Source of the DNA: Chrysemys picta bellii
Lineage: Eukaryota
Length of the DNA: 64,000 bases
Reading direction: 5' to 3'
Assembly (NCBI RefSeq): GCF_011386835.1
Contig: NC_088791.1
Coordinates: 88,660,001-88,724,000, forward strand
Shown here: positions 42 to 61,784 of the stretch, one piece after another
Numbering within the stretch: position 1 is the stretch's first letter
How the letters are laid out: each line of letters begins with the position of its first letter
Notes under the pieces: generated by a model
Told to the model about the DNA's origin: nothing
Databases searched by the model: none
Seen by the model: only the letters and a program-made list of their open reading frames with translations
Translations under genes and position numbers: made by a program

Positions 42-865
42 TAAGCTTGCCAGGTGTCCGGTTTTCGACCAGAGCACCCAGTTGAAAAGGGACCCCGGTG
101 GCTCCGGTCGGCACTGCTGACCGGGCCATTAAAAGTCTGGTTGGCGCGGGGCTGGCAGGCTCCGCGTGACTCCCTAGAAGTGGCAACTTGTCCCTTGGCT
201 CCTAGGAAAAGGAACTGCCACGGGGGCTCCAGGCACTGCCTCCGCCCTGCTTTGGCCAGGAACTGCGGCCAATGGGAGCTGCAGGAGCGGCACCTGTGGG
301 CAGAGGCAGTGCGCAGAGCTGCCTGGCCACGCCTCTGCCTAAGAGCCAAGGGACATGTCACTGCTTCTGGGGAGCCACCTGAGGTAAGCACTGCCCGGAG
401 CCTGCACTTCGCACCCCCTCCCATGCCCCAGCCCCCAGCCCTGAGCCCCCTCCTGCACCCAAACTCCCTCCCAAAGCCTGCACCCTGAACCCCCTCCTGT
501 GCCCCAATTCCCTGCCCCAGCCCAGATTCCCCTCCCGCATATTGAACCCCTCATTTATGGCCCCACCCTAGATCCTTCACCCCCCCACCCCAGCCAGAGG
601 CCATACCCAATCCCCTGCCTCATCCCAGAGCCCTCTCCCATACTCTGAACCCCTCTGCCCCACCCCCCAGACTGAAGCCCCCTCCTGCATCCCAAACCCC
701 TGCTCCAGCCTGGTGAAAATAAGTGAGTGAGGGTGGGAGAGAGCAAGTGACAGACAGAGGGGGGATGGAGTGAGTGGGGGTGGAGCCTTGGAGAAGGGGT
801 GAGGCAGTGGGTGGGGCTCATTAAAGGATGGGAAAGGGGTGGGGCAAGGGTGTTCAGCTTTGTGG
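42..865 (+). mobile_element. Non-autonomous hAT-type DNA element (TAGGGTTGCCA-like terminus), right end missing
   Basis: Begins TAAGCTTGCCAGGTGTCCGG, a degenerate TAGGGTTGCCA terminus. GC-rich cassette and C/G-run interior. Cut at ~865 by the Tx1 3' end. Confidence 0.5.
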
Positions 866-869
866 TGGG

Positions 870-1665
870 GTGATCCTGTTGGGATCCGGGAAGTGAGTGG
901 GTGGGAAGGACCTCCCCCAGCCTAAGGGGAGGATCCACAAGGTCCGGGATCTCAATTAAGTACAGGGGACAACTAAAGATATAACAGGAATGGGAGTGAG
1001 GTCACAGGGCTAAACGAAGGGAACCTGATGGGGACACCGAGCAGAGAACCCTGGACAGCACCCACTGCTCCTTGAAGGTGTCAAGGGAGCCAGCGGACGC
1101 CGCCCAGAGGAACTCTGCTCGGATGCATGAGCAGACGGAGGATCGGAAATAGACTCTACAGTCGCAGAAAACCCCATTGGCCAACCTCCTCTCCCTGGTT
1201 TTGTAGATGGCCATTTTGGCCAATGCTAGGAGGAGGTTGACAAGGAGGTCCCATGATTTGGTGGGGCCATGGATAGGTAATGCATAGGTAAGGAGGTAAG
1301 GGGAAAAGTGCAGCCAAAAACGTAACAGGATATCTAAGAGGAGCCGGAATAGGAGCTGCAACCTGGCACACTCCAGATACACGTGCGCCAGGGTCTCCCT
1401 CAGACTGCAGAAGGGGCAGGTGTCCAGGACAGGGGTGAACCATGCCAAGAACATGCCCGTGCTCACGGCTCTGTGAAGGAGCCGTCAACTAATATCCCCA
1501 GAGGGTTTTGGGACCAGGGTGGAATATAGGCTGGCCCACTAGGGTTCCTCACCCTCCAGAGGTGGTAGGAGGTCCCACCACTTCGTGTCAGGGCGGGAGG
1601 CGAGGGTGAGGACGTGAAGGGGGTGGAGCATGAGTGTGTACAGATGTCTCCTTGGCGTGGTCCGG
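870..1665 (-). mobile_element. 5'-truncated Tx1-clade LINE (ORF2 C-terminal zinc finger + 3' UTR)
   Basis: ORF 1002-1466 has CPFC..ETLAHVYLEC (zf-RVT CCHC) and LLVNLLLALAKMAIYK. The upstream part continues in frameshifted frames to ~1665. No poly(A) tail. Confidence 0.8.
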
Positions 1666-2315
1666 ATGTACGGCACATACATTCCTATTTTGGCAGCAAC
1701 CCATCTCGCCACAGAGTACATCAATAGAAAGGGCTACTTTTTATGGTTATGCAAATGTTGGTGGATCACTAGGGACATTTCATTGACATCAGTGTGGGTT
1801 GGTCAGGAAAGATGCATGATGCTTACATCTTCAGGCAAGCAGGACAGTTCAGAAAGCTAAACGCTGAAACATTCTTTCCTGACAGGCAGATTATTGTCAC
1901 TGGTAACATTGCCCTGCCAGTAGTGATCCTGGAGGCTTCACCATACCCCTTGCTCCCCTGCCTCATGAAGCCATACACCGGCCATCTCACTAGCACCAAG
2001 GAAAGCTTCAACTACCAGCTCAGCAGATGCAGAATGACAGGCGAACGTGCTTTTGGAAGTCTGAAAGGATGCTGGCAGTGTTTACACAGAAGAATGGAAT
2101 GCAGTGAGAAAAAATATCACAGTGATTATAACTGCCTGTTGTGTCCTTCATGATATCTATGAGGCAGAGGGGGAAGGGTTGCCTTCAGGGTGGAGGTGAA
2201 GAGGCTGTCTGCTGACTTGGAACAGGCAGATACAAGGGCCAGTACAAGAGCTCAACATGGAGCTATGTGGCTGAGGGAGGCCTTGAAAGAGCACTTTAAT
2301 GGTCAGCCACATTAA
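1666..2315 (+). pseudogene. PIF/Harbinger transposase, C-terminal half (copy 0, divergent family)
   Basis: GTYIPIL..EYINRKGYF, GKMHDAYIF, PYPLLPCLMKPY and SRCRMTGERAFGSLKGCW across frameshifted frames. Confidence 0.9.
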
Positions 2316-2699
2316 TGTGCTATGGCAGCTGGCCCTGAGGTTTGGGGGACTGTTAGGAATTGTATAGTGCTTGCTGTACATTTATAATTATTATACTGCA
2401 TGTTGCACTGAACCTATGAGTTCTGTGGTCCTGTAAGATTACAAGTAATAGGTGCATGGAGTAGTGCTAAGCATTCTGCAGCATATGTTGTGACATAATA
2501 AAGTTGAATTTATTAAATAAATAAATACATAAATAAAGTAAATGTATTGCATACCAAAAACAATGCAAAGAAAAAGTGCAATTAAAAACAAAACAATACA
2601 ATACCAACTTCTACAACAAATTAATGGAATAGAACTTTAAAATTAGAAAGGTGGAAACACTCCTGTCTATTTCAGTCCATTTTGGCTACACATACATCA

Positions 2700-3140
2700 G
2701 CTGTAGGTCTCACAAGTCAGTGTATGAGAAGCTGTGGTTGTTCTGTCTGTCTCTTAGCATAGGGTGGTAGGAGTAGGAATGCAGCCCATGATGCCACGTG
2801 GAATGTTGAGGGGTATCGGGACCTGTTAAACTGGCATACTCCAGTGACTGCAGAGGGTGGCGAGGCTGTGGTTGTTGGGCCTGTAGGTCAACAAGAATCT
2901 GCAGCATTTTGTGTTCGCTGTCTGAGAAGTTCCATTATGTCTTGGTGAATCGCCCTCTCCTCTTCCTGCTGGGATTCCTGGGCCTTTCTCCTGTCCACTC
3001 TTTCCTTCTGCATTCTGTCTTCCATATTCACCCTCCAGGCCCTCTGTTCACCCTCTGATGCACTTCTTTCTCCCTCTCATCAGGGCCAGGCATTCCACAA
3101 GAGGGGGTTCCCATCAAGGACGCAAAGGCAGCAGCAACAG
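2700..3140 (-). pseudogene. Harbinger Myb/SANT gene, coiled-coil 3' exon (copy 0)
   Basis: Peptide AWRVNMEDRMQKERVDRR..IMELLRQ..LQILVDLQAQQ..RHPLQSL is colinear with exon 2 at 28953-29440. Convergent to the transposase. Confidence 0.6.
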
Positions 3141-3434
3141 ATAAAACAGACAGCTCTATTGTCACAATGAAAACAGAAAATCAAGTTTCAGACTTATTCC
3201 AATAAAAGTTTTAAATAAGACATGCTGATTGATTGACACTTCAACTTTGGTGTGCTTCTGCACAGCACCATTCTCCCCATCCATGGTCAGAACGGCCCAT
3301 AAAGGGGAAGGAGCAAAGGGGAAAAAGATGAGGACAGAATTTTTCTGTCACATGGAACAATAAAATGTCAACCCCTATTTCCATGGGTATGAGTACAGGG
3401 CAATGGCACCAAGTATTGGCACTATTTTCCACAG

Positions 3435-3763
3435 GTGGTAGTGATTTTGAGCTGATATTTCACTCTTGAGGGTAACAAAGGCACAGAGACCACAGCTGCT
3501 GCTGGAGTTCTGAAGTAGCCCAGGTCTCTATGCCACTAGCCTATTTACTTCAATGGTGCCTGCCAAAGTCATTGCAGAATGATGTGGGAAAGTGTCTGAT
3601 CATGGAGGAAGAAATAAGGCAGCCATCTCTAGAAAAGCTTCAGGAGAGGATTGCAAAGTACGTCCATGGAAGTTCCATTGAGATCTTGCAGGAGGATACA
3701 AGGGATAGGTATGTAAACTGCCATGCATGCCCCCGCCCTCAACCTAGCCCTACAGGGGAATGA
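3435..3763 (+). pseudogene. BEN-domain-like exon nested antisense in Harbinger Myb intron (copy 0)
   Basis: Acceptor TTTTCCACAG|G at 3434/3435. Reads DISLLRVT..LLLEF*SSPGLYA..MVP..GKVSDHGGRNKAA..KYVHGSSIEI..ED..YVN, with 2 stops and 2 frameshifts. Confidence 0.65.
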
Positions 3764-4069
3764 AAAGCAGATAACAACACTACCTCTGTTTGTTGTACCT
3801 CTATCTCTTCTCATACAAGTAAAACAATGAAAAGTGTTTTACAGGGATCCTCTAAGTCAGATATAAGCATAATAATTCACTGAAGGGTGACATGTGAGTT
3901 CTCTGTTGAGAGCCAGTAGCCCACTGGTCATCATAATCACTGCAAAATATACATATGCATACTACTTAAAATTATGTTCTTAAGGCAGGTAACCAATATG
4001 TGACATATCTCAAACAGGTTCCTTTCAAGCAGGAGGTAACAGATGCTTTTATCTATGTCTGGTCATGGG

Positions 4070-6130: not shown

Positions 6131-6383
6131 GTGATCAATTGTGCCGTGCCTTCACCAGGGAAAGAGAACAGACATGTGACAACATGTAATTCCATTACAT
6201 TTGACATTACACTTTAATTTCCTAGTTTTTGCACTTTTGTTTCCATTTGTGTTTTTGAGGTTTGTTGAGTGTTGGTTATTTTGTTTAGGGTTAGCAGGCT
6301 TTGGAATTGCATCTGTCAGGTGGAAGGTTCCCAAGGTTGGGAAGAGGGATCCCAGCCATACACCTCTGCAGAAATACCAACCC

Positions 6384-6446
6384 TTGAACTCACAACCCTG
6401 GGTTTAGCAGGCCAATGCTCAAACCACTGAGCTATCCCTCCCCCCC
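6384..6446 (-). mobile_element. tRNA-derived head of tortoise-type PolIII/SINE (truncated after B box)
   Basis: GGGATAGCTCAGTGGTTTGAGCATTGGCCTGCTAAACCCAGGGTTGTGAGTTCAA, identical to the head of the SINE at 8857. Confidence 0.85.
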
Positions 6447-7680
6447 AAGACGACATGCTTTCCAAGAGGACATGCTGAACCCCTTCCGGGCACGTCCTCT
6501 CCCAGCCTAACCACTGAGCAGCCACGCCGTGAGGTGAAGTGCTGCTAGGTTGGGATGGAGGAGGTGGCCCTGGTCCTGGGAGAGCAGGTCCGGGTGGGAC
6601 GGCAATGGCCATGGCGGGGCTACTGCCAGGCCCAGGAGGGTCCCATACCAATGCTGCCTGGACCATGCCAGGGTGATCAGTAGGATCCGGGCCCTGTCTG
6701 TTTTTATCTTTTCCAGAATCTTGCCTATCAGTGAGAATGGGGGGAAAGTATAGAGAAACTGGCCGACCAGGACAGGAGAAAGGCATTGAAGATAGCGCCC
6801 CTGCCCCAGCCTCCCACCCGGCGCTGAACCAGGGACAGCGACGGTTCTGCTGAGTCGCAAACAGGTCCACCTGGGGTGTTCCCCACTCTTGGAAAAGTCT
6901 GTACACCACCTCTGGGTGAAGAGACCACTCGTGTTGAGAGGAGAAGTCCCTACTAAAGTGATCCGCCCACGAGTTCCGGGTGCCCGGTAGGTGGTAGGCC
7001 TGTAGGCAAATGTTGTGGGCTATACAGAAGTCCCACAGCCTGAGGGCTTCCTGGCAGAGGGCTGAGGATTGGGCCCCGCCATGCCTGTTGATGTAAAACA
7101 TTGAGGCCGTGTTGTCAGTGAGAACCCTGGCCACCCAGCCCTCCAGGTGTGAGCGGAAGGCCATGCACGCCAGCCGCACCGCCCTGAGATCCTTGACATT
7201 TATGTGGAGGGCCAGGTCCTGCGCAGACCACAGACCTTGGGTCTGAACGTCCCCCACATGGGCTCCCCAACCCAGGTCCGATGCATCAGACACCAGTTCC
7301 ATCGACCGGGGCCTGCCTCTGAATGGGACCCCATGGAGCATGTTTCCCGGGGAGGACCACCATCATAGGGAGGCAATCACCGGTTTGGGCACAGTGAGGA
7401 TTTTGTCCATCCTGTCTCTGGCCTGGGAGAATGCCAAGGCCAACCAGAGCTGGCGGGCCTCATCCTGAGTCTGGCGTGGCAGATCACATACGTGCACGCT
7501 GACATGTGACCCAAGAGCTGGAGGCACGCTCTGGCTGTTGTCACTGGAAACCTTGTGACCGTGTTGATAAGCCCTTTCAGGGTCTTGAAACTGTCCTGAG
7601 GGAGGGAGGCTCTGGCCGATGTGGCGTCCAGGACCGCCCCTATAAACTCTATGCGTTGTACTGGGACTAACGTGCAAGGA
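6447..7680 (-). mobile_element. DIRS-type retrotransposon fragment: RT end, RNase H, methyltransferase-like domain, start of recombinase ORF
   Basis: SDASDLGWGAH..HINVKDLRAV..TDNTASMFYINRHGG..HLPG..WADHFSR (DIRS RNase H). VDLFAT and FPPFSLI..WSRQHWY..LTAW (MT-like domain). Confidence 0.9.
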
Positions 7681-10262: not shown

Positions 10263-10930
10263 CTAGGAGCTCATTTTCAGCTGACTATCCACCATGACCC
10301 CCAAATCTTTTTCACAGTCATTGATTCCCAGAATAGATGTATGACTTTATATTTGAACATATTGAAATACATATTGTTTGCCTGTGTCGAGTTTACCAAG
10401 AGATCAAGATTGTTCTGTATGAGTGGCCTGTTCTTTTAATTATTTACCATTCCCCCAATCTTTTCGCCATCTGAAACCTTTATCATTAATGTTTTTATTC
10501 CAGGTTACTGATAAAAATGTTAAATGGTGTATGGCCAAGAACTAATCCCTGCAAGATGTCACTGGAAGCCACTCAACAACGATTCTCCATTTATAATTAT
10601 ATTTTGAGGCCTATTTGTTAACAAATTTTTAATTCAGTGAATGTCACCATCTTGATTTTATACTGTTCTAAGTTTATAAATTAAGATATCATGTGGTACA
10701 GAAGTCTAGATATATAACAATAACACTGTTATTGAATAGCATGATCAAAGAGGCACACTGAATGTTGAAGCTGTAGTTCCATAGAACAATGTTTGATCTG
10801 GAAACATAATCTAAAAATCACAAATAAATCATTATCTACCTTAATTCTACCTTAATTTCCTCCTTTGTAAAAAAACCTGTACATTGTATTCTAAAAGTAA
10901 TTTAATACCTTAATCATTTATGCCCAAAGC

Positions 10931-10932
<2 letters not shown>

Positions 10933-10979
<47 letters not shown>
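10933..10979. repeat. (GT)n(AT)n microsatellite
   Basis: Direct inspection. Confidence 0.95.
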
Positions 10980-13204
10980 GCAATTTTTTTCTCAGTTTAG
11001 AATTCCTGAAATAGCTTTTGTTCTGATCCTAGTGTGCATATATTTCAATAGGCTTTTACTGTATTGTTACCCCTTTTGAACTAAGTAGTTAGCCAAATTT
11101 GGGGTATGGTGGGTTGTTCCAGTTGTGAGGAGAGATTGATGATATAGCCATTTTCTTTGATGCAATCTTCTTTATTTACAAAATTATACATAAAGTCCTG
11201 TTTCCCCAATCACAGGAGGAAATCAAATCGCAAGAGAGAGTTTGCTGACTTTTCCAAACCTGACTTTTCAGCCAGCACTCTGCTTAAACAGCTTTCTCTC
11301 TTAGCTTTGTCTCAGGGCTACATTACCAACATTTCTGTCTAACAGCAACACTAACTGCCTTTCTGCCTGCTTCTGACTCTGTGTCCTGAATGCATCTCAC
11401 TCCTCCTCTCCCCCCAAACACACATACACAGTTATCCAAACAATGCTCAGCTAAAGTCCTCCTCATCATGATTAAAAATCCTGGGTGGACTGGGTGATTG
11501 GGTGGTGGTGGTGAGCTGCTTAACTATCTCTCACCACTATCTTAAAAGAAGGGTGGTAACTCACATCCATAACAAGGTTAAACCCAACCTACAACAACTC
11601 ATCCCTCCTAAGCTTTGTCCATCCTCCCAAAGAGGCTGAAAATGAAGATACAACAACGAATCCCAACCAGAAAAAAATGAAATAGTCCAACAAATTATAT
11701 TAATTATCTACTATGAACTATTTAGAGTGTCAGGGTGTTTTCACAAAAACAAAAAGGAGTGCAGTGGCACCTTAAAGACTAACAGACAAAGACTTCACAG
11801 AACTAAGCCAAATTAATTTTCTCACCCATATCTTTTTGGATTTTCCCCCCCTTTCAATCAATGTAAAGAGGCCTTTTTTCAATGAGCCCCTGAGGAACCC
11901 CTATTGTTTCTGTGGAATTTGCTGAGTGATATATACTGTGCTCATTTTGTTCTAATTGGGAATTCATTTATGTTACAGTATTATCACATAACAAGTGAAG
12001 AGACATAATTTTGAGTCTATGACATTATACAGTACAATAAAACAAATAAATTGAAATAAATAAAGTTCATTCTCTATTGTTGCCCAATTAGACTGTATAC
12101 ATAAAGACAATATGTATATGTTTTACAAGCCAAAGCTAGTTTGCTCCTATATTGACCTATGAATCAAACTTTTTGTTGCTCTTCTGTGATCAGAAATTTA
12201 AAGAAAATATTTTCATTTATTTTTGAGATTAAGTTAAAGTTGAAAGTATTAATCTTCTATAAAATGTTATAAAATATTTAAGAATATATTTTCTTCATCA
12301 GTTTTATTGTCTATGGCCTTAATATTTTAAACAGCCTTGTAGTCCCTAGTAGTAAGCAACTATGATCATGTATTAATCATAAGAAAATTAAGAAACTTTT
12401 TAGTTGTTAAAAGGTTAGTGAACATGAGAATACTTTATGGGAAAGATGACATTTTTTCTACTAAAGAATATGTTGACCAAATGTCTTGATAACCTTGCAC
12501 AAAGTATGAAAAATGAACATTCTTATGGCACCAAATTAAATTCTGTTTTGGAATAGACAGAAAAAAATAGTCTCACTAGTTCTATTCCTGATCTGAAAGT
12601 GATTCCTTCTCCTTTGGCCTTGAATTAAAAACTCCCTTCTCTTATTTCAGTTTCCCCTCTGTTAAGTGGGACAGTCCTGTTTGTCTACTGATCTCACAGC
12701 CATTTTGCCAAAATGAATTAGTAAAAGTTTGCAACCGTCTAAAAAGTACTGTATATGTGTGAAATGTTGTTAATATGGTTATGCACTATCATACTTCTGT
12801 GCATTATATGAATCTAAGGTGACCCACCTAATATGTACCTAACAGTGAAATATTATCTCTGTCCAGCAGACCTATGAACAGATGTTTAGATTGAAAGTTT
12901 CTGTGTTGAGCCAGGGAACGACTTGTGAATAATGGTCTAAATTTCATTGTTGCCAATACCAAGGGATTACAAAATACACACTCCTGTTTCACTTGGTAAG
13001 TGTGCAGTCAAGAGCTAACTCTGGAACTATCCTTTTGATTATTGTTATTATTATTATTAATTCTAGTAACGTGAGTCTTGAGCCAGCATGCAGAGACTTC
13101 CTTTTTCACTCCTCCACTCATCTCCCCCCAGCACCTCCCCCAGCACTGACACTCACCATTTCTTCAAAGCACCTAGCACGTTCTCTGGGTCTGCCTCCTG
13201 TGAA

Positions 13205-26725: not shown

Positions 26726-27612
26726 AAGGGTTTGTTATGTTAGAGACCTGGCCTGCAGTGACCTCATGTGCTTGTTTGGGTTCATGACCTTAGTCAATAA
26801 TAAGGGTAATGAAGTGCATGGGAATTTAAGGAACAGTTAGAAAAGGTAAAATTGTAACTGCTAATCTCCTATATCTTTGATCTGGGAATTTTCTCCTAGG
26901 CTGCAATGGTATTTGAGCTCAGAGGTTCTTGTGTGTTTTTGTCCCCAAAAGTGAGCAATAGCATTCATACCACTGAAGATTTGTTATCAAATTCAGTGGG
27001 TTCTCCTTGATGCACATATTTATCATTATGGCTATAACATTATATAATTATCTATAGACAAATACAACCTATGTATAACAGATACTCTAGGATTCAGTCC
27101 ATAAGGAGCAACAATGTGGAGAAAGGTCAGGCCCTAGAAAAGTGAGACAACCCAGTGAAAAATTGCCCCCAAAGATTAATTTTACACTCTTATTCTTCTC
27201 TCTGTATTAGATTCTTAGACTTAGACCTGGTCTACACTACGAGTTTAGGTTGAATTTAGCAGTGTTGGATCGATTTAACCCTGCACCCATCCACACAACG
27301 AAGGCATTTCTGTCAACTTAAAGGGCTCTTAAAATCGATTTCGGTACTTCTCCCCGATGAGGGGATTAGCGCTGAAATCAACCTTGCTGGGTCGAATTTG
27401 GGGTAGTGTGGACGCAATTTGACGATATTGTTCTCCGGGAGCTATCCCAGAGTGCTTCATTGTGACCACTCTGGACAGCACTCTCAACTCTGATGCACTG
27501 GCCAGGTAGACAGGAAAAGCCCCACGAACTTTTGAATTTCATTTCCTGTTTGGCCAGCATGGCGAGCTGATCAGCACAGGAGACCATGCAGAGCTCATCA
27601 GCACAGGTGACC

Positions 27613-29440
27613 ATGCTGTCCCAGAATTTCAAAAGAGCTCCAGCATGGACCAAACGGGAGGTACTGGATCTGATTGCTGTTTGAGGAGATGAATCCGTGC
27701 TATCCGAACTCCATTCCAAAAGACGAAATGCCCAAATATTTGAAAAAATCTCCAAGGGCATGAAGGACAGAGGCTATAACAGGGACCTGCAGCAGTGCCA
27801 CCTGAAACTTAAGGAGCTCAGACAAGCCTACCAAAGAACCAGAGAGGCAAACGGCCGCTCCGGGTCAGAGCCCCAGACATGCCGCTTCTATGATGAGCTG
27901 CATGCATTCTAGGGGGTGCCCCTACAACTACCCCACCCCTGTGCGTGGACTCCATCAATGGATTCTCACACAACAGGGATGCGGATTTTGGGGACAAGGA
28001 AGATGATGATGAGGGGGACATTGAAGATAGAGCATAGCATGCAAGGGGAGAAAACTTTTTCCCCTGACAGCCGGGAACTCTTTATCACCCTAGACCCAGT
28101 ACCCTCCCAACCCACCCAAGGCAGGCTCACGGACCTTGAAGGCGGAGAAGGGACCTCTGGTGAGTGTACCTCTGTAAATATTGTACATGGTTTAAAAGCA
28201 AGCATGTTTAATGATTAATTTGCCCTGAAAACTTGGGTTGCATTCGCGGCCAGTACAGCTACTGGAAAAGTCTGTTAACGTGTATGGGGATGGAGCATAA
28301 ATCCTCCAGGGACATCTCAATGAAGCTCTCCTGGATGTACTCCCAAAGCTTTTGCAAAAGGTTTCTGGAGAGGGCAGCCTTATTCCGTCCTCCATGGTAG
28401 CACACTTTATCACGCCAGGCCAGTAGCACGTAGTCTGGAATCATTGCATATCAAAGCATGGCAGTGTATGGTCCCAGTGTTTGCTGGCATTCCAGCAACA
28501 TCCGTTCTTTATCTCTCTGTGTTATCCTAAGGAGAGTGATATCATTCACGGTCACCTGGTTGAAATAGGGGAATTTTATTAAGGGGACATTCAGAGCTGG
28601 CTGTTCCTGCTGGGCTGTTTGCCTGTGGCTGAACAGAAATCATCCCCGCTGTGCGCCACGCAGTGGGGGGAGGGGTGAAGCGATCATCCCAGATAATAGG
28701 GTGTGTGTATGTGGGGGAAGAGGGGCTTAGTTGGGTTTGTGCTGCACTTTAACCCGAAAACCGCAGCCCCTCCTTTTAAATGGCCAACCCATTTTAAATG
28801 GCCAACCCAACAGGTGCTTGGTATGGGAAATGAGGGTGCTGCTGTTTGAAACCATGTAATGTTAACAGCTTGGTTCACCGTGAAAGAGTCTACCCATTGT
28901 TCTCTAAAATGTGTCTTTTTAAATACTACTCTCCCTTTTTTTCCTCCCGCAGCTGCAAATGTTTCAACGCTCTCTATATCATCTGTGTCCCAGAGGCTAG
29001 CGAAGATTAGAAGGTTAAAAAAATGCACTTGTGATGAAATGTTCTCTGAGCTTATGCAGTCCTCCCACACTGAAAGAGCCCAGCAGAATGCATGGAGGCA
29101 GACACTTTCAGAGTGCAGGAAATCACTAAATGAACGCGAGGACATGTGGCGGGATCAAGATGATAGGTGGCGTCAGTGTGATGAGAGGAGGCAGGATGCA
29201 ATGCTGAGGCTACTAGAAGATCAAACTGATATTCTCCAGCATATTGTTGAGGTGCAGAAAAGGAAGCAGGAGCACAGACCGCCACTGCAGCCCCTGTGTA
29301 ACGAACTGCCCTCCTCCCCAAGTTCCATAGCCTCCTCACCCAGATGCCCAAGAACGCGGTGGGGGAGCCTCCGGGCACCCAACCACTCCACCCTAAAGGA
29401 CTCTCCAAGCAACAAAAGGCTGGCATTCAATAAGTTTTGA
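27613..29440 (+). pseudogene. Harbinger Myb/SANT-like DNA-binding gene, 2 exons (27613-28159, 28953-29440)
   Basis: KRAPAWTKREVLDLIAV*GDESV..RNAQIFEKISKGMKDRGYNRD..QCHLKLKELRQAY..CRFYDELH. Donor GTGAGT at 28160 and acceptor CCCGCAG at 28952. TGA at 27682. Confidence 0.85.
28259..28555 (-). pseudogene. BEN-domain-like exon (98 codons) antisense within the Myb intron (copy 1)
   Basis: Acceptor CCCCTATTTCAACCAG|GTG. VTVNDITLLRITQRDKERMLLECQQTLGPYTAML*YAMIPDYVLLAWRDKVCYHGGRNKAALSRNLLQKLWEYIQESFIEMSLEDLCSIPIHVNRLFQ*, with one internal stop. Confidence 0.7.
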
Positions 29441-29699: not shown

Positions 29700-31614
29700 T
29701 CACACCGTAGCCTGGCCAGTCATGAAACTGGTTTTCAAAGCTTCTCCGATGTGCAGCGCGCCCTGCTGTGCTCTTCTAACTGCCCTGGTGTCTGGCTGCA
29801 CTTAATCAGCGGCCAGGCAATTTGCCTCAACCTCCCACCCTGCCATAAACGTCTCCCCCTTACTCACACAGATATTGTGGAGCACACAGCAAGCAGTAAT
29901 AACAATGGGAACATTGGTTTCGCTGAGGTCTAATCGAGTCAGTAAACTGCGCCAGCACTAGGGTTACCATACGTCCGGATTTTCCCGGACATGTCCGGCT
30001 TTTGGGGGCTCAAATCCCCGTCCGGGGGGAAATCCCCCAAAGCCGGGCATGTCCGGGAAAATCGGGAGGCTCGGCCGGGGCCTCTTTGTGCGGGGCCGGG
30101 GTCGCGGGGCCGGGGGCATGGTGCCGGGCCGGGCGCCAGGCCGGGCCAGTCCCGCGGGGCCGGGGGCGCGGGGCCGGTCCGGGCCCGCGGGGCCGGGGAG
30201 CCGGTCCGGGCCCGCGGGGCTGGGAGCCGGGCCCGCGGGGCTGGGAGCCGGGCCGGGGTTGGGGAGCCGGGCCCGCGGGGCTGGGAGCCGGGCCGGGGTC
30301 AGGGAGCCGGGCCGGGGTCGGGGAGCCGGGCTCGGGGAGCCGGGCCCGCGGGGCTGGGAGCCGGGCCCGCGGGGCTGGGAGCCGGGAGCCGGGGGTGGTC
30401 GGCCGGGGCCGCGCCTCCTCCCCCCCACAACCCCCCCCCCCTTACCTGCTTCAGGCTTCCCGCGAATTAAATGTTCGCGGGAAGCAGGGGAGAGGGCGGA
30501 GACTTTGAGAGGGGCGGAGTTGGGGCGGGGGCGGGGCCCCCGGGAGTGTCCTCCATTAGGAGGCACAAAATATGGTAACCCTAGCCAGCACACTTTATAG
30601 GTTCAAAGGCAAATTCTACCACCATTCTGCACTTGGTCAGCCTACAGTTGAACAGATCCTGACTACTGTCCAGGGTGCCTGTGTATAGCTTCATGAGCCA
30701 TGGCATTAAGGGGTAGGCTGGTCCCCAAGGATAACTATAGGCATTTCAACATCCCCAACAGTTATTTTCCAGTCTGGAAAGTAAGTCCCTTGCTGCAGCT
30801 GTTTACACAGACCAGAGTTCCTAAAGATGTGAGTGTTATGTACCTTTCCTGGCAATCCCATGTTGATATTGGTGAAACGTCCCGTGTGATCCACCAGTGC
30901 TTGCAGCACCATTGAAAAGTACCCCTTTTGGTTTATGTACTGGCTGCCTTGGTGCTCTAGTCCCAAGATAGGGATATGCGTTCCATCTATCGCCCCACCA
31001 CAGTTAGAGAATCCCATTGCAGCAAAGCCATCCACTATGACCTGCACATTTCCCAGAGTCACTACCCTTGACAGCAGCAGGTCAGTGATCGCCTTGGCTA
31101 CTTGGATCACAGCAGCCCCCACAATAGATTTGCCCACTCCAAATTGATTTCCGACTGACCGGTAGCTGTCTGGCATTGCAAGCTTCCAGAGGGCTATCGC
31201 CACTTGCTTGTGAACTGTGAGGGCTGCTCTCATCTTGACATTCTTGCGCTTCAGGGCAGGGGAAAGCAAGTCACAAAGTTCCATGAAAGTGCCCTTACGC
31301 ATGCGAAAGTTTTGTAGCCACTGGGAATCATCCCAGACCTGCAACACTATGCAGTCCCACCAGCCTGTGCTTGTTTCCCAGGCCCAGAATCAGTGTTCCA
31401 CGGCATGAACCTGCCCCATTACCACCATGATGTCCAAATTGCCAGGGCCCATGCTTTGCGAGAAGTCTGTGTCCATGTCCTCATCACTCTCGTCACCGTG
31501 CTGCCATCGACTCCTCACCTGCTTTTGCAGGTTCTGGTGCTGCATACACTGCAGGATAATGCGTGTAGTGTTTACTGTGCTCATAACTGCCGCGGTGATC
31601 TGACCGGGCTCCAT
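29700..31614 (-). pseudogene. Harbinger transposase (copy 1), frameshifted and split by a hAT MITE
   Basis: MEPGQITAAV start, GGAIDGTHIP, YINQKGYFSMVLQALVDH and VILGD followed by a frameshift. Confidence 0.92.
29959..30583. mobile_element. Young hAT MITE with GC-rich tandem interior
   Basis: Perfect 13-bp TIR TAGGGTTACCATA / TATGGTAACCCTA. Perfect 8-bp TSD GCCAGCAC. Confidence 0.93.
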
Positions 31615-45159: not shown

Positions 45160-46319
45160 GGGTATGTCTACATTATGAAATTAGGTTGATTTTATAGAAG
45201 TCAATTTTTAGAAATAGATTTTATACAGTTGATTGCATATGTCCATACTAAGGGCACTAAGTCAGTGGAGTGCCTTCTCACTACCGTGGCTAGCATCGAC
45301 CTACGGAGCGTTGCGCTGTGGGTAGCTATCCCACAGTTCCCGCAGTCTCCGCTGCCCATTGGAATTCTGGGTTAAGCTCCCAATGCCCGATGGGGCAAAA
45401 ACATTGTCCCGGGTGGTTTTGGGTACATATCGTCAGTCGCCCCTCCCTCCGTGAAAGCAACGGCAGACAATCGTTTCGCGCCAGACACCAGGGCGATTAG
45501 AAGAGTACCGCAAGGCGCGCTGCGCATCAGAGAGGCTTTGAAAACCAGTTTCATGACTGGCCAGGCTGCGATGTGACAGTTGTGTGTGTTTCTCCTTGAT
45601 GAAAACCCACCCCCTTTGTTGATTTTAATTCCCTGTAAGCCAACCACCCTCCCCCCTTCGAAATAAGGTAACTATTGTTTTGAAACCGTGCATTCTTTCT
45701 TTATTAATTAAAAAAAAGAGAGAGATAACGGACAAGGTAGCCCGGGTGGGGTGGGGGAGGAGGGAAGGGACAAGGCCACATTGCTTATTGTAGCCACACT
45801 AAAAATCAAACTGTTTGAATGACAGCCTTCTGTTGTTTGGGCCATCCTGTGCAGTGGAGTGGCTGGGTGCCCGGAACCTTCCCGCCCCTTCCTCCCCCCA
45901 AACCCCGCATTCTTGGTCATCTGGGTGAGGAGGCTATGGAACATGGGGAGGAAGGTAAGCGGTTATACAGTGGATGCAGTGGGGGTCTGTGCTCTTGTTG
46001 GCTTTCCTGCAGCTCCAACAGATGCTTCATCATGTGCTTTTCCTCCCCCATTAGCCTCACATCCTGCCTCCGCTCTTCGCGCTCACTTAATTCTTTCCTG
46101 GCCTCTGCCACTGAATGTCTCCATGCATTAAGCTGTGCCCTATCAGTGCGGAAGGACTGCATGAGCTCAGAAATCATGTCATTGCGAGTGCATTTTTTTT
46201 GCCTTCTAATCTGCAATAACCTCAGGGACGGAAACGGTGTTGGTTGTGATGGACGCATTCATTTTTAAATAGACCTAACTCGGCTAAATTTGACCTAACC
46301 CTGTAGTGTAGACTAGGCC
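45160..46319. mobile_element. Internally deleted Harbinger (copy 2, same family as copies 1 and 3)
   Basis: TTA|GGGTATGTCTACATTA ... TAGTGTAGACTAGGCC|TTA, with TTA TSD inside the PLE terminus. Retains the transposase tail and Myb exon 2. Confidence 0.92.
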
Positions 46320-57682: not shown

Positions 57683-58221
57683 TACTAAGTTTGCCCTTCT
57701 ACAGTCTTTTGAAACCGCATCCATCCTCCATGAGCTTTTGAATATAATTACTAAATGTTCTGAGATTGCTTCAGCTAATTGATGAAGTACTCTAGGATGA
57801 ATTTCATGAGGCCCTGATGACTTGAATACATTTAACTTATCTAAGGGTATGTCTACACTATGAAATTAGATCAATTTTATAGAAGTCAATTTTTAGGAAT
57901 CGATTTTATACAGTCGAATGTGTACATCCCCGCTAAGCGCATTAAGTCAGTGGAGTGCGTCCTCACTACCGTGGCTAGCATCGACTCATGGAGCAGTGCA
58001 CTGTGGGAAGCTATCCCACAGTTTCTGCAGTCTCTGCTGTCCATTGGAATTATGGGTTAAGCTCCCAATGCCTGATGGGGCAAAAACATTGTCACGGGTG
58101 GGTTTGGTACATGTCGTCACTCTCCCCTCCCTCCCTCTGTCCCTCCGTGAAAGCAACTGCAGACAATCATTTCGCGCCTTTTTGCCTGGGTTACCAGTGC
58201 AGATGCCATAGTACGGCAAGC

Positions 58222-59523
58222 ATGGAGCCCGCTCAGCTCACCGCTGCTGTTGCGAGCATTGTAAACACCTTTCGCATTATACTGCAGTATGTGCAGAACG
58301 TGGCTAAGACATGGCAGCACGAGGACGATTGTGATGAGGAGATGGACACAGACGTTCCTGAAAGCATGGGCTGTGGCAATTGGGACATTGTGGCGGCAGT
58401 GGGGCTGGTTGATACAGTGGAACACCGATTCTGGGCCCGGCAAACAAGCACAGACTGGTGGGACTGCATAGTATTGCAGGTATGGGATGATCCCCCGTGG
58501 CTGCAAAACTTTTGCATGCATACGGTCACTTTCCTGGAACTCTGTGAGTTGCTTTCCCCCACTCTGAAGCACAGGAATACCAAGATGAGAGCTGCCCTGA
58601 CAGTTGAGAAGCGAGTGGTGATAGCCCTGTGGAAGTTTGTAACACCTGACTGCTACCGGTCAGTCAGAAATCAATTTGGAGTGGGCAAATCTACTGTGGG
58701 GGCTGCTGTGATCCAAGTAGCCAATGCAATTGTTGACGTTCTGTTATCAAGGCTAGTGACTCTGGGAAATGTGCAGGTCATAGTGGATGGCTTTGCTGCA
58801 ATGGGATTCCCTAACTGGGGTGGGGCGATAGACGGAACACATATCCCTATCTTGGCACCGGACCACCTTGCTAACCAGTACATAAACCGCAAGGGGTACT
58901 TCTCAATGGTGCTGCAAGCATTGGAGGATCACAAGAGACATTTCACCGACATCAACGTGGGATGGCTGGGAAAGGTGCATGATGCTCGCATCTTTAGGAA
59001 CTCTGGGCTGTTTGAGCAGTTGCAGGAAGGGACTTACTTCCCAGACCAGAAAATTACCATTGGGGATGTTGAAATGCCAATAGTTATCCTTGGAAACCCA
59101 GCCTACTCCTTGCTCCCATGGCTCATGAAGCCATACACAGGCAAACTGCACAGTAGTAAGGAACAGTTCAACTATAGGCTGAGCAAGTGCAGAATGGTGG
59201 TAGAATGTGCCTTTGGACATTTAAAAGCTCGCTGGCACTGTTTGCTGACTAGGTTAGACCTCAGCACAACCAGTGTTGTTACTGCTTGCTGTGTGCTTCA
59301 TAATATCTGTGAGAGTAAGAGGGAGACATTTATGTCGGGGTGGGAGGTTGAGGCAAATCGCCTGGCTGCCAATTTTGAACAGCCAGACACCAGGGTGATT
59401 AGAAGAGCACAGGTTGCCAAGCTGTGCATCAGAGAGGCTTTGAAAACCAGTTTCTTGATGGCCAGGCTACGGTGTGACAGTTGTGCGTGTTTCTCCTTGA
59501 TGCAAACCCGCCCCCTTTGTTGA
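58222..59523 (+). CDS. Harbinger transposase, open frame but catalytic Asp replaced (GNPAY)
   Basis: MEPAQLTAAV..GGAIDGTHIP..GKVHDARIF..ILGNPAY..VVECAFGHLKARW. A 1-nt deletion near the C-terminus extends the tail. Confidence 0.85.
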   Translation: MEPAQLTAAVASIVNTFRIILQYVQNVAKTWQHEDDCDEEMDTDVPESMGCGNWDIVAAVGLVDTVEHRFWARQTSTDWWDCIVLQVWDDPPWLQNFCMHTVTFLELCELLSPTLKHRNTKMRAALTVEKRVVIALWKFVTPDCYRSVRNQFGVGKSTVGAAVIQVANAIVDVLLSRLVTLGNVQVIVDGFAAMGFPNWGGAIDGTHIPILAPDHLANQYINRKGYFSMVLQALEDHKRHFTDINVGWLGKVHDARIFRNSGLFEQLQEGTYFPDQKITIGDVEMPIVILGNPAYSLLPWLMKPYTGKLHSSKEQFNYRLSKCRMVVECAFGHLKARWHCLLTRLDLSTTSVVTACCVLHNICESKRETFMSGWEVEANRLAANFEQPDTRVIRRAQVAKLCIREALKTSFLMARLRCDSCACFSLMQTRPLC

Positions 59524-60178: not shown

Positions 60179-60676
60179 CTGGGGGGGGGGGGGATAAAAA
60201 GGGAGAGTAAAATTTAAGATGATACATTTCTGAGAACAAAAGGGAGACTCTTTCACAGTGAATCAAGCAATTCACAGCAGACAGCACATGTGCTTTAGAT
60301 ACAAAGTCACATTTTGCCTTTTATATTGAGCGCCTGCCGGTATGGTGACTCATCACATACGGCTGGGCAACAGAATTCGGTTTCCAAGCAGCCATGGTAA
60401 GCCAAAAGGTATGCAGGTTTGGCTTCTAATGCCTTGATAACATGTGGAAATGTTTTCAAACTGCAGCATCCTCCTTTCCCATAGCAAGCAATGCCGGCTG
60501 GGTTTCACATTTACAAGGAGGGGCTGCAGTTTTTGGGTGGATGTGCAGCACACACCTTCCCCCACCCCTCTGCGTGGCTATTCTCAGGGATGATCCCTTT
60601 TAGCCAAGCGCAAACAGCCCAGCATGAACGGCGTCCTTTTATTGTTCCCTTACAAAAATTCCCCTATTTTAACCTG

Positions 60677-60966
60677 GTGACCATGAATGATATCACTCTC
60701 CTGAGGCTAACGCAGAAAGATATAGACCGAATGTTGCTTGAATGTGACCAAAACCCAGGACCATTCACTGCCATGCTTTGTGCTGCAATGATTCCAGACA
60801 ACTGGCTTGGCGTGGTAAAATGTCCTACCATGGAGGACGAAATAAGGCAGCCTTCCCTAGAAACCTTCTGCAAAGGCTTTCAGAGTACCTCTAGGAGAGC
60901 TTCATGGAGATGTCCCTGGAGGATTCCCACTCCATCCCCAGATACGTTAACAGACTTTTCCAGTAG
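60677..60966 (+). pseudogene. BEN-domain-like exon antisense in Myb intron (copy 3)
   Basis: VTMNDITLLRLTQKDIDRMLLECDQNPGPFTAMLCAAMIPD[7-nt del]LAWRGKMSYHGGRNKAAFPRNLLQRLSEYL*ESFMEMSLEDSHSIPRYVNRLFQ*. Confidence 0.7.
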
Positions 60967-61065
60967 CTGTACTGGCCACGAATGCATCCCAAGTCTTCAG
61001 GGCAAATAAAACATTAAACACTATTGCTTTTAAACCCTATACTGTAGTTACAAATGTGCACTCAC

Positions 61066-61312
61066 CAGAGGGGCCTTCTCTGCCTTCAGGGTCAGGGATC
61101 CCGATTTGGGAGGGTATTGGCTCCAAGGTGATGAAAAGGTCCTGGCTGCCAGGGAGAATGGATTTACCACTTGTCTGCTGCGCATTCTCCTTCTCCTCCT
61201 CTTCCTCATTTACAAAATCCTCCTCTGTGTTGCGTGAGACTCCCCCCTTGCAGGTGTCCATGGACAGTGGTGGGGTAGTGGTAGGATCCCCCCCTAGAAT
61301 GCCATGCAGCTG
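61066..61312 (-). pseudogene. Harbinger Myb gene exon 1, 3' remnant (copy 3)
   Basis: LHGILGGDPTTTPPLSMDT..EEEEEKEN..SQDLFITLEP..EGPSG|GTGAGT. Confidence 0.85.
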
Positions 61313-61784
61313 TGTCACGGAGTATTGGGGAACTCAGGGCCCTGCACCCCCGGCTTCCTGCGATTCACCATGACTCTCAGCCAGCCAGTAAAGCAGAAGG
61401 TTTATTTGGATGACAGGAATACAGTCCAAGACAGGTCTTGCAGGCACAGACAACAGGGCCCCCCTCAGTTAGGTCCAGCTTGGGGTCCCAGGGCATGCCA
61501 GCCCACCCCCCTTGGGGGGTCAGAGCCATCTCTGCCTCCCAGCCATCTCTCCAGCCTGCTTCCAGCCTGCTTCCAGCACTCTCCTTCCGCGACCCCTCCC
61601 ACCGCCTTTGTTCAGTTTCCCGGGCCCCGGAGTCATCTGACCTCCAACCCCCTCCTGGGTTCTCATGTTACAAGCTCAGGTATGTTCCCTTGGGCCGGCT
61701 CCCATCCCCCGATGCAGACCATCCTAGTCACACTCCCCTGTCAGCATTCACACACCCCAGCAAGAACAGTCCCGGTTCGTCACA
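61313..61784 (-). mobile_element. 3' LTR (472 bp) of Gmr1-like Gypsy element
   Basis: Minus strand TGTGACGAAC...CTCCGTGACA. Polypurine tract AAGGGGGGAGAGA directly upstream (61785-61797). Confidence 0.9.

What the first reader, a model, noticed from the sequence alone, without database searches (positions are those of the whole stretch)
3435..3763. Same hidden exon is conserved at protein level in a divergent Harbinger family
This copy belongs to a clearly different family but has the same layout: transposase >, < Myb exon 2, hidden exon > in the intron. A hand alignment of 3451-3624 to the 28.5-kb exon is gapless, with about 25 of 57 residues identical (DIxLLRxT, LLE, GxY, MxP, KV, HGGRNKAA) and mostly conservative changes elsewhere. 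It also keeps a strong acceptor, TTTTCCACAG|G. Gapless amino-acid conservation across families is hard to explain for neutral intron DNA.
Basis: partly seen in the sequence, partly recalled or inferred. Interest (0 to 1): 0.7.

Follow-up and report, generated by a model that had tools for sequence, protein, structure and literature searches.

The report
BEN-like third exon, divergent turtle Harbinger
A decayed copy of a jumping gene from a divergent turtle Harbinger family still carries the same small extra protein-coding exon, which looks like a BEN-type DNA-binding domain, so this "third" coding unit is an old, selected part of elements usually described as having two genes.

Summary
Window 3451-3624 aligns without gaps to the 28.5-kb exon, with 25 of 58 residues identical, and TTTTCCACAG|G sits at 3425-3435. 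The similarity runs from 3435 to about 3712.

Copy A (1665-3835) and copy B share alignable DNA only in the transposase and in this stretch. The substitution pattern fits coding in the proposed frame only (p = 0.0004).

Eight outside copies, one of them from green sea turtle, have the same exon. It starts at a conserved phase-0 splice acceptor, has no conserved ATG, and is followed by a stop and, in most copies, a poly(A)-type hexamer. Wherever the contig reaches far enough, the donor of Myb exon 1 lies on the other strand. Between subfamilies dN/dS is 0.22-0.5.

Every named relative among 1.84 billion proteins is from a turtle. Pfam finds nothing. A structure model and a language-model search both point to BEN domains.

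RefSeq and BGI gene models join the transposase N-terminus to this exon. Other RefSeq isoforms of host genes (PFKFB4, RAB3C, CDK6, TEDC1) end in it. I therefore read it as an alternative last exon of the transposase transcript.

Copy A itself is dead and truncated. RNA reads could not be obtained. This scan had already noted the BEN-like exon on other DNA of this genome. The new points here are the divergent family and the deep two-clade split.

The parts
1665..2315 (+). Copy A: 5'-truncated transposase remnant (C-terminal part only).
   Evidence: blastn to the B transposase gives 63-65% identity. tblastn gives 43-45% aa identity. Pfam DDE_Tnp_4 matches 1794-2150 at E = 3.2e-12.
2807..3152 (-). 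Copy A: probable remnant of Myb-gene exon 2 (C-terminal coiled-coil part). Its acceptor appears mutated.
   Evidence: There is a weak match to B Myb exon 2: 24% over 100 aa, E = 0.001 in a 600-nt search space. Positional homology with L004 12243-12025 and L002 280-343 supports it.
3420..3434 (+). Copy A: polypyrimidine tract and AG of the 3' splice site.
   Evidence: Read directly in the sequence. A pyrimidine tract plus AG stands at the homologous position in 9 of 11 copies from both clades, all in phase 0.
3435..3712 (+). Copy A: decayed BEN-like terminal coding exon. Lesions are a 1-nt indel before 3451, stops at 3511 and 3580, and a +1 nt insertion near 3637.
   Evidence: In the exon tree it groups with L003 inside the A-like clade (98/96 support).
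3713..3835 (+). Copy A: diverged end of the exon plus 3' trailer with an AGTAAA hexamer. Homology to the relative L003 stops at 3835, so the copy is 3'-truncated before Myb exon 1.
   Evidence: blastn of L003 against the window covers 3194-3835.
28259..28555 (-). Copy B: the reference 'hidden exon' with one in-frame stop (28451-28453). TAG stop at 28259-28261; acceptor tract at 28556-28570.
31337..31519 (-). Copy B: transposase N-terminal coding region holding two phase-0 donor candidates, CAG|GTGAGG (GT at 31518-31517) and CAG|GTCTGG (GT at 31338-31337).
   Evidence: The Chelonia model P0020 uses the first position. The RefSeq models P0005 and P0042 use the second.
27540..29440 (+). Copy B: Myb-like gene, exon 1 to 28160 and exon 2 from 28952. 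Its intron holds the hidden exon on the opposite strand.
   Evidence: Pfam Myb_DNA-bind_4 matches 27697-27909 at E = 6e-15. Sequence.
57988..59523 (+). Copy C: uninterrupted 511-codon transposase ORF. The phase-0 donor candidate CAG|GTATGG has its GT at 58480-58481.
   Evidence: (DDE_Tnp_4 at E = 9e-33). RefSeq P0042 maps to 58141-58482 and then 60677-60975.
60674..60966 (+). Copy C: hidden exon with the acceptor AG mutated to TG (60675-60676), a 7-nt deletion near 60800 and a stop at 60892-60894. An AATAAA follows the stop.

Best explanation
Window 3435-3712 is a dead copy of a roughly 100-codon, 3'-terminal protein-coding exon that turtle Harbinger (PIF/Harbinger) transposons carry. It lies on the transposase strand, inside the intron of their oppositely oriented Myb-like gene. 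The exon encodes a BEN-like, all-helical domain of the DNA-binding type. It has no start codon of its own. It begins at a conserved phase-0 splice acceptor, ends in a stop, and in most copies is followed by a poly(A)-type hexamer just before the Myb exon 1 donor on the other strand. Most likely (inferred, not shown by RNA) it is an alternative last exon of the transposase transcription unit. A phase-0 donor inside the N-terminal transposase coding region would splice to it, skipping the DDE catalytic part and the antisense Myb exon 2. The product would be a short 'transposase N-terminus + BEN-like domain' protein. I infer that this protein acts as a DNA-binding accessory or regulator of the element, much as truncated splice isoforms do in other transposons. 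Because the exon brings its own acceptor, stop and polyadenylation signal, inserted copies can also be picked up as alternative last exons of host genes. The exon predates the split between the A-like and the B/C-like families and was kept by purifying selection in both.
For: Shown:
- A and B align only in the transposase and this stretch.
- The substitution pattern is frame-specific and protein-like.
- Between subfamilies dN/dS is 0.22-0.5 with a third-position excess.
- The phase-0 acceptor is conserved in 9 of 11 copies, and no in-frame ATG is conserved: the 'M' of the Logan ORFs is a GTG directly after the AG.
- Stop, poly(A)-type hexamers and the Myb exon 1 donor lie 100-150 nt downstream.
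- The full layout is present in a green sea turtle A-like element, L004.
- The exon tree has two deep clades with 100/99 support, and A sits in the non-B/C clade.
- BEN likeness: the AlphaFold model of P0003 (pLDDT 73, pTM 0.58, five helices) has BEN domains as the four best Foldseek hits. They are five of the six best of 48,161 chains with VIA-align (BEND3 BD1, Z 6.2). They are also all eight best on the second look (BEND3 BEN4: Z 6.8, rmsd 3.5, 81 residues). Twenty of 30 named ESM-Atlas neighbours are PF10523 BEN clusters (top score 0.95, 209 of 256 features shared).

Supporting the splice model:
- RefSeq Malaclemys XP_053864860/61 (P0042, P0005) join the transposase N-terminus, ending ...IVLQ, to the exon. 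They map colinearly on copy C.
- Chelonia models P0051, P0002, P0020, P0035 and P0045 make the same kind of join in three subfamilies.
- The donors at those positions are phase 0, matching the acceptor.

Use of the acceptor by host genes:
- RefSeq isoforms of RAB3C and TEDC1 (Chrysemys), CDK6 (Malaclemys), PFKFB4 (Trachemys and Chrysemys) and a glycine-transporter-like gene (Mauremys) end in this exon.
Against: - The joins rest on database gene models, and those models use at least three different donors.
- Copy A lacks the 5' part of the transposase, so the join cannot be inspected in the copy under review.
- Pfam BEN (PF10523) does not match any member, even at E up to 10. A profile search of PDB sequences found nothing.
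- The BEN Z-scores (up to 6.8) are below the level the tool calls safe for helical proteins.
- Copy C has an intact 511-codon transposase ORF but a thrice-broken BEN exon, so the exon is not needed for a copy to persist.
- The regulatory function is pure inference.
Confidence: 0.6

Rival explanations
1. A free-standing third gene. The exon would be the main exon of a small gene with its own promoter and a tiny first exon inside the Myb intron, and would not be joined to the transposase.
For: - Earlier notes of this scan describe a two-exon, 99-residue gene; I did not check this.
- One subfamily (L008, P0048) has an ATG directly at the exon start.
- RefSeq P0003 has an N-terminus that does not match the element copies in this window.
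Against: - No in-frame ATG is conserved upstream of or at the acceptor in the other copies. The frame closes 0-14 codons upstream of the AG in the A-like copies.
- Several independent gene models join it to the transposase N-terminus.
- No promoter was looked for or found.
Confidence: 0.2
2. A captured host BEN-gene fragment that merely hitch-hikes. It would have been acquired once by an ancestral Harbinger, would have no role for the element, and its apparent conservation would reflect shared ancestry.
For: - The domain has no detectable relatives in Harbingers outside turtles in the protein libraries searched.
- Copy C keeps an intact transposase ORF while its exon is broken.
Against: - The exon is as conserved as the transposase across the deepest split: 41-45% against 43-45% aa identity for A-B, and 74% against 63% for B-C. 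The rest of the intron is unalignable.
- dN/dS is well below 1 between subfamilies.
- Acceptor phase, stop and poly(A)-type signals are kept in both clades.
Confidence: 0.1
3. A conserved non-coding element. The stretch would be kept as DNA or RNA, for example an intronic enhancer or promoter of the Myb gene, a transposase- or Myb-binding site, or a terminator cassette. On this reading the open frame is incidental.
For: - The poly(A)-type hexamers and the acceptor are DNA/RNA signals.
- In the A-B pair alone, differences are spread 30/25/36 over codon positions, which is not significantly uneven.
Against: - Only the proposed frame shows protein-like substitutions (p = 0.0004); the other five frames look random.
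- Third-position excess and low dN/dS are seen among intact copies.
- Frames of 99-117 codons stay open in six independent copies.
- The product has a recognisable fold.
Confidence: 0.04

Closest known systems
PIF/Harbinger DNA transposons of vertebrates (two-gene elements: DDE_Tnp_4 transposase plus Myb/SANT-like protein; e.g. Harbinger3_DR, fish Harbingers in PMC9179366)
   Same: The copies here have a DDE_Tnp_4 transposase and a Myb_DNA-bind_4 gene, arranged convergently.
   Different: The literature I could search describes two ORFs and stresses their persistence (PMC9179366; PMC9392472). Here a third conserved coding exon sits antisense in the Myb intron. No paper in the held library links Harbinger with a BEN domain.
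BEN domain proteins (BEND3, BEND6, NACC1, BANP, Drosophila Bsg25A/Insv; Pfam PF10523)
   Same: The size is about 95 residues, the fold is five helices, BEN domains are the best structural matches, and BEN clusters are the nearest language-model neighbours.
   Different: There is no HMMER-level sequence match to PF10523 or to solved BEN chains. DNA binding is untested. The domain is encoded by a transposon exon rather than a host gene.
Host-transposase fusion genes formed by 'transposase capture' through transposon-borne splice sites (Cosby et al., bioRxiv 10.1101/2020.05.07.082677)
   Same: An acceptor supplied by a DNA transposon lets upstream host exons splice into a transposon-encoded DNA-binding-type domain. 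RefSeq isoforms of PFKFB4, RAB3C, CDK6 and TEDC1 end in this exon.
   Different: The captured module is not the transposase DNA-binding domain but a separate BEN-like exon. That paper's main text does not mention Harbinger, BEN or turtles. Whether any of these fusions is functional is unknown.
Truncated transposase isoforms made by alternative splicing that regulate transposition (P element 66-kDa and KP-type repressors; from my own knowledge, not checked here)
   Same: The proposed logic is the same: one transcription unit gives either the full transposase or a short N-terminal isoform without the catalytic domain.
   Different: Here the short isoform would gain a new C-terminal domain from a dedicated exon. 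Any repressor activity is pure inference.

Membership tests
PIF/Harbinger transposon | DDE_Tnp_4 (PIF/Harbinger-type) transposase | tested here: met
   Pfam PF13359: A 1794-2150 at E = 3.2e-12, B at 1.7e-14, C at 9.3e-33.
PIF/Harbinger transposon | Second gene for a Myb/SANT-like DNA-binding protein | tested here: inconclusive
   Met for B (PF13837, E = 6e-15) and for the relatives L008 and L002. In copy A only a weak exon 2 remnant is left, and exon 1 is lost by truncation at 3835.
PIF/Harbinger transposon | Terminal inverted repeats and a 3-bp target-site duplication | not tested
   Copy A is truncated at both ends (1665 and 3835). I did not search for the ends of B or C.
BEN domain (PF10523) | Sequence match to the Pfam BEN profile | tested here: not met
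   No BEN hit for 35 + 10 members or for the window pieces, even at E up to 10. A profile search against PDB sequences was blank.
BEN domain (PF10523) | All-helical fold of about 90-100 residues that superposes on solved BEN domains | tested here: met
   Model of P0003: BEN chains take Foldseek ranks 1-4 (E 0.6-1.4), five of the top six of 48,161 chains (Z 4.6-6.2) and the top eight on the second look (Z up to 6.8, rmsd 3.5, 81 aligned). The Z values are modest and the model is of middling confidence (pTM 0.58). The A-like model P0008 failed.
BEN domain (PF10523) | Family-level likeness by an independent method | tested here: met
   ESM Atlas features: 20 of 30 named neighbour clusters carry PF10523, with best score 0.95 and 209 of 256 features shared.
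BEN domain (PF10523) | Sequence-specific DNA binding | not testable with these tools
   Needs EMSA, SELEX or ChIP.
Alternative 3'-terminal exon of the transposase transcript | Conserved acceptor, matching intron phase with an upstream donor, no ATG of its own, stop and poly(A) signal | tested here: met
Alternative 3'-terminal exon of the transposase transcript | RNA junction reads from a transposase donor to the acceptor | tested here: inconclusive
Only database gene models show the join: RefSeq P0005 and P0042, and BGI P0051, P0002, P0020 and P0035.

The most novel reading that the evidence does not exclude
Turtle Harbingers are three-product elements. One transcription unit makes either the transposase or, by alternative splicing, a transposase-N-terminus-BEN fusion that binds DNA and tunes transposition or silencing. 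The same self-contained acceptor-ORF-stop-poly(A) cassette has repeatedly donated a BEN-type domain to host genes (PFKFB4, shared by two emydid turtles, and RAB3C, CDK6, TEDC1). That would be a route by which BEN domains spread in animal proteomes.
Probability: 0.35. Interest if true: 0.78.

Novelty: new variant of a known kind. Interest (0 to 1): 0.64.

Why it matters
Vertebrate Harbingers are the textbook two-gene DNA transposon, with a transposase and a Myb-like partner. They are also the source of domesticated genes such as HARBI1, NAIF1 and the MSANTD family.

A third coding module that is at least as conserved as the transposase across a deep family split would add a new player to how these elements work. 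It would also give a concrete, testable example of alternative splicing producing a non-catalytic transposase isoform in this superfamily.

The module offers a ready-made exon that host genes are already annotated as using. That bears on where lineage-specific BEN-type domains come from.

The specific contribution of this window is the out-group. Copy A belongs to the other deep clade of the exon, so the module is ancestral to the known turtle families rather than a quirk of one.

Tried and rejected
- **Word search.** The word-based protein search with the 63-aa B piece found nothing, because of the length window and because the products are mostly fusions.
- **Pfam.** Searches on window pieces and on 45 relatives found no family. 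Only chance hits such as Casc1_N and DUF6206 appeared, below their cut-offs.
- **PDB sequence search.** The first profile (A2) was polluted by a Rab3 fusion partner. The cleaned profile (A3) found nothing.
- **First structure model.** The A-like P0008 model (pTM 0.34) collapsed into one long helix and matched only coiled coils. I do not use it for or against BEN.
- **ESM Atlas with P0008.** No usable hit.
- **P0036.** This 1446-aa protein is an Ig/LRR protein and the hit is spurious.
- **Xpat.** It did not appear in either of my protein searches, and no paper links Xpat with BEN.
- **Antisense coding.** I considered coding on the Myb-sense strand and rejected it, because no antisense frame shows protein-like substitutions in A-B or A-C.
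- **Joined model.** I did not search or fold the joined transposase-N-terminus + exon model. Exons were handled one by one, by reference.

Full report
**What is at the coordinates.** The first 4 kb of the window hold a fragment of a Harbinger element, copy A.
- It has a 5'-truncated transposase on the plus strand (1665-2315). Pfam DDE_Tnp_4 matches 1794-2150 at E = 3.2e-12.
- It has a weakly recognisable remnant of the Myb gene's second exon on the minus strand, about 2807-3152.
- The flagged stretch follows on the plus strand.

3451-3624 aligns without gaps to the exon at 28.5 kb (copy B, minus strand), with 25 of 58 residues identical and the motifs listed. TTTTCCACAG|G is at 3425-3435. tblastn of the B peptide against the whole window finds A at E = 9e-12. 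It also finds a third copy, C, at 60665-60963 with the same layout.

The homology is longer than reported. It starts right at the acceptor (3435) and runs to about 3712. It is interrupted in A by a 1-nt indel before 3451, two in-frame stops (3511, 3580) and a +1 insertion near 3637. Against its closest relative (L003) copy A ends at 3835. It therefore has no Myb exon 1, and 'inside the intron' is an inference from relatives.

**Is it more than neutral intron?** Sensitive blastn between A and B aligns only the transposase (63-65% identity) and this stretch (61.6% over 245 nt). Myb exon 2 and the rest of the intron do not align.

In amino acids the exon is as conserved as the transposase:

| Pair | Exon identity | Transposase identity |
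|---|---|---|
| A-B | 41-45% | 43-45% |
| B-C | 74% | 63% |

B and C are 75-92% identical throughout the intron, so that pair is no test.

For A-B the raw codon-position counts (30/25/36) are not significantly uneven, and dN/dS is 0.44. An amino-acid-aware test is clear, however. I kept the number of substitutions fixed and dealt them to random positions. The in-frame BLOSUM score is then 75 +/- 22, against 146 observed (p = 0.0004). For A-C the p-value is 0.004. None of the other five frames departs from random.

**Relatives elsewhere.** I searched a profile of the exon's second half against 1.84 billion representative proteins. It found 40 hits, 18 of them below 1e-10.

Every hit that carries a name is from a turtle: Chelonia, Caretta, Malaclemys, Chrysemys, Trachemys, Mauremys or Gopherus. 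One weak hit is a spurious Ig/LRR protein. No crocodilian, squamate, amphibian or fish protein appeared. That limits only what has been annotated as protein.

I fetched eight loci that hold A-like or other versions, L001-L008.
- L004, from the green sea turtle assembly, has the complete arrangement. The transposase is on the plus strand at 10517-11745. Myb exon 2 is on the minus strand at 12243-12025. The exon is on the plus strand at 12553-12867. Myb exon 1 is on the minus strand at 13564-13250.
- L008 has a Myb_DNA-bind_4 ORF on the other strand right after the exon.
- L002 has a Myb exon 1 homologue.
- Seven copies show the reverse-complemented Myb exon 1 donor 100-150 nt after the stop.

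A maximum-likelihood tree of the exon splits into two clades with 100/99 support. One holds B, C and L008. The other, A-like clade holds L001-L007, with A beside L003 at 98/96 support. The exon is therefore older than the split between these families.

**Selection in the A-like clade.** Six outside copies keep open frames of 99-117 codons. Between subfamilies dN/dS is 0.22-0.5, and third positions change most. For example, L008-B gives 29/21/51 and L001-L002 gives 23/22/39. Four disjoint pairs sum to 117/110/172 (chi-square p = 2e-4).

**Exon anatomy.** A pyrimidine tract plus AG stands at the homologous position in 9 of 11 copies. C (TG) and L007 are mutated there. The frame is always open in phase 0 from the first base after the AG.

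Upstream of the AG the frame closes within 0-14 codons in the A-like copies. No in-frame ATG is conserved. The 'M' of the Logan ORFs is a GTG called by a prokaryote-style gene finder.

After the stop most copies have AATAAA, ATTAAA or AGTAAA before the Myb donor. These are the features of a 3'-terminal exon that needs an upstream coding exon on the transposase strand.

**What it is joined to.** The RefSeq models XP_053864860 and XP_053864861 of Malaclemys (P0042, P0005) run from the transposase N-terminus, ending ...WWDRIVLQ, straight into the exon. P0042 maps colinearly on copy C at 58141-58482 and then 60677-60975.

Green sea turtle models P0051, P0002, P0020, P0035 and P0045 make the same kind of join in three subfamilies, but with other donors.

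At those places B has CAG|GTGAGG and CAG|GTCTGG, C has CAG|GTATGG and L004 has CAG|GTCTGG. All are in phase 0 and match the acceptor.

The most economical reading is an alternative last exon of the transposase transcription unit. It would give a short N-terminal isoform that lacks the DDE domain.

This reading is inferred from gene models. I also did not search the joined model; exons were handled separately by reference.

**What it encodes.** Pfam finds no family in the window pieces or in 45 relatives. A clean profile finds no solved chain by sequence.

A first AlphaFold model of an A-like member was poor and uninformative. A second, of RefSeq P0003 with a 54-row alignment, has pLDDT 73, pTM 0.58 and five helices. 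Its structural matches are as follows.
- The four best Foldseek matches are BEN domains (NACC1, BEND6, BEND3), at weak E-values.
- In an independent all-against-all search, five of the six best of 48,161 chains are BEN domains. The best is BEND3 BD1 (Z 6.2, rmsd 2.8, 74 residues).
- On the second look all eight best are BEN domains. The best is BEND3 BEN4 (Z 6.8, rmsd 3.5, 81 residues).

A language-model feature search gives PF10523 BEN clusters as 20 of the 30 named neighbours (score 0.95, 209 of 256 features shared).

Each line is modest alone. Together they make a BEN-like domain likely; I put it at about 0.8. A-like and B-like versions are clear homologues (E down to 1e-19), so the assignment carries over to copy A.

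**Host genes.** RefSeq isoforms of RAB3C and TEDC1 (Chrysemys picta), CDK6 (Malaclemys), PFKFB4 (Trachemys and Chrysemys) and a glycine-transporter-like gene (Mauremys) end in copies of this exon. This fits a functional acceptor. It also resembles the 'transposase capture' route to new genes, in which the transposon supplies the splice site (bioRxiv 10.1101/2020.05.07.082677).

**Known or new.** Papers I could search describe vertebrate Harbingers as two-ORF elements (PMC9179366 and PMC9392472). None links Harbinger with a BEN domain. Repbase annotations could not be checked.

Earlier notes of this same scan describe a BEN-fold third gene in Harbingers elsewhere in this genome, and at 28259-28555 of this window. 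I treated those as leads and re-derived the points above independently.
- My results agree on selection, on BEN likeness and on the host-gene capture.
- They agree with the one note that favours splicing onto the transposase start.
- They do not reproduce the claimed similarity to Xpat.

**Verdict.** The locus itself is a dead, doubly truncated copy. Its value is comparative: it shows that the BEN-like exon is ancestral to two deeply split groups of turtle Harbingers and was kept by selection in both.

Noticed in passing
window 57988-59523 (+), with 60674-60966 and 61037-61408: Copy C keeps an uninterrupted 511-codon transposase ORF (DDE_Tnp_4, E = 9e-33). Its BEN-like exon has three lesions (acceptor AG to TG, a 7-nt deletion, a stop), and its Myb exon 1 region is badly decayed or truncated. 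That is an uneven pattern of decay for one copy.
   Followed up: partly
window 29959-30583, flanks 29951-29958 and 30584-30591: A 625-bp insertion interrupts the transposase of copy B. It has terminal inverted repeats starting TAGGGTTACCATA, a GC-rich internal tandem repeat, and an 8-bp duplication GCCAGCAC on both sides. It looks like a hAT-type non-autonomous element.
   Followed up: no
window 45383-45499 (+) and 45808-46235 (-): This is a fourth Harbinger fragment. A 5' leader-like piece matches the start of RefSeq P0042, and it lies next to a Myb exon 2 homologue. No transposase or BEN-like exon was detected between or beside them, so it may be an internal-deletion derivative.
   Followed up: no
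RefSeq proteins P0016/P0053-P0056, P0004, P0006, P0007, P0017 (not in the window): Annotated isoforms of the host genes PFKFB4 (in both Trachemys and Chrysemys), RAB3C, CDK6, TEDC1 and a glycine-transporter-like gene end in copies of the BEN-like exon. PFKFB4 has five such isoforms, shared by two genera.
   Followed up: partly
window 1002-1466 (-) and 6316-7341 (-): A 154-codon ORF abuts the truncated 5' end of copy A and probably belongs to the retroelement that cut it. Further on there is a 341-codon ORF with an RNase H-like look. I examined neither.
   Followed up: no
L008 753-1424 (-) against 504-806 (+): In this metagenome-derived contig the called Myb_DNA-bind_4 ORF overlaps the end of the BEN-like ORF by about 50 nt on the opposite strand. 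This subfamily also has an ATG directly at the start of the exon.
   Followed up: no
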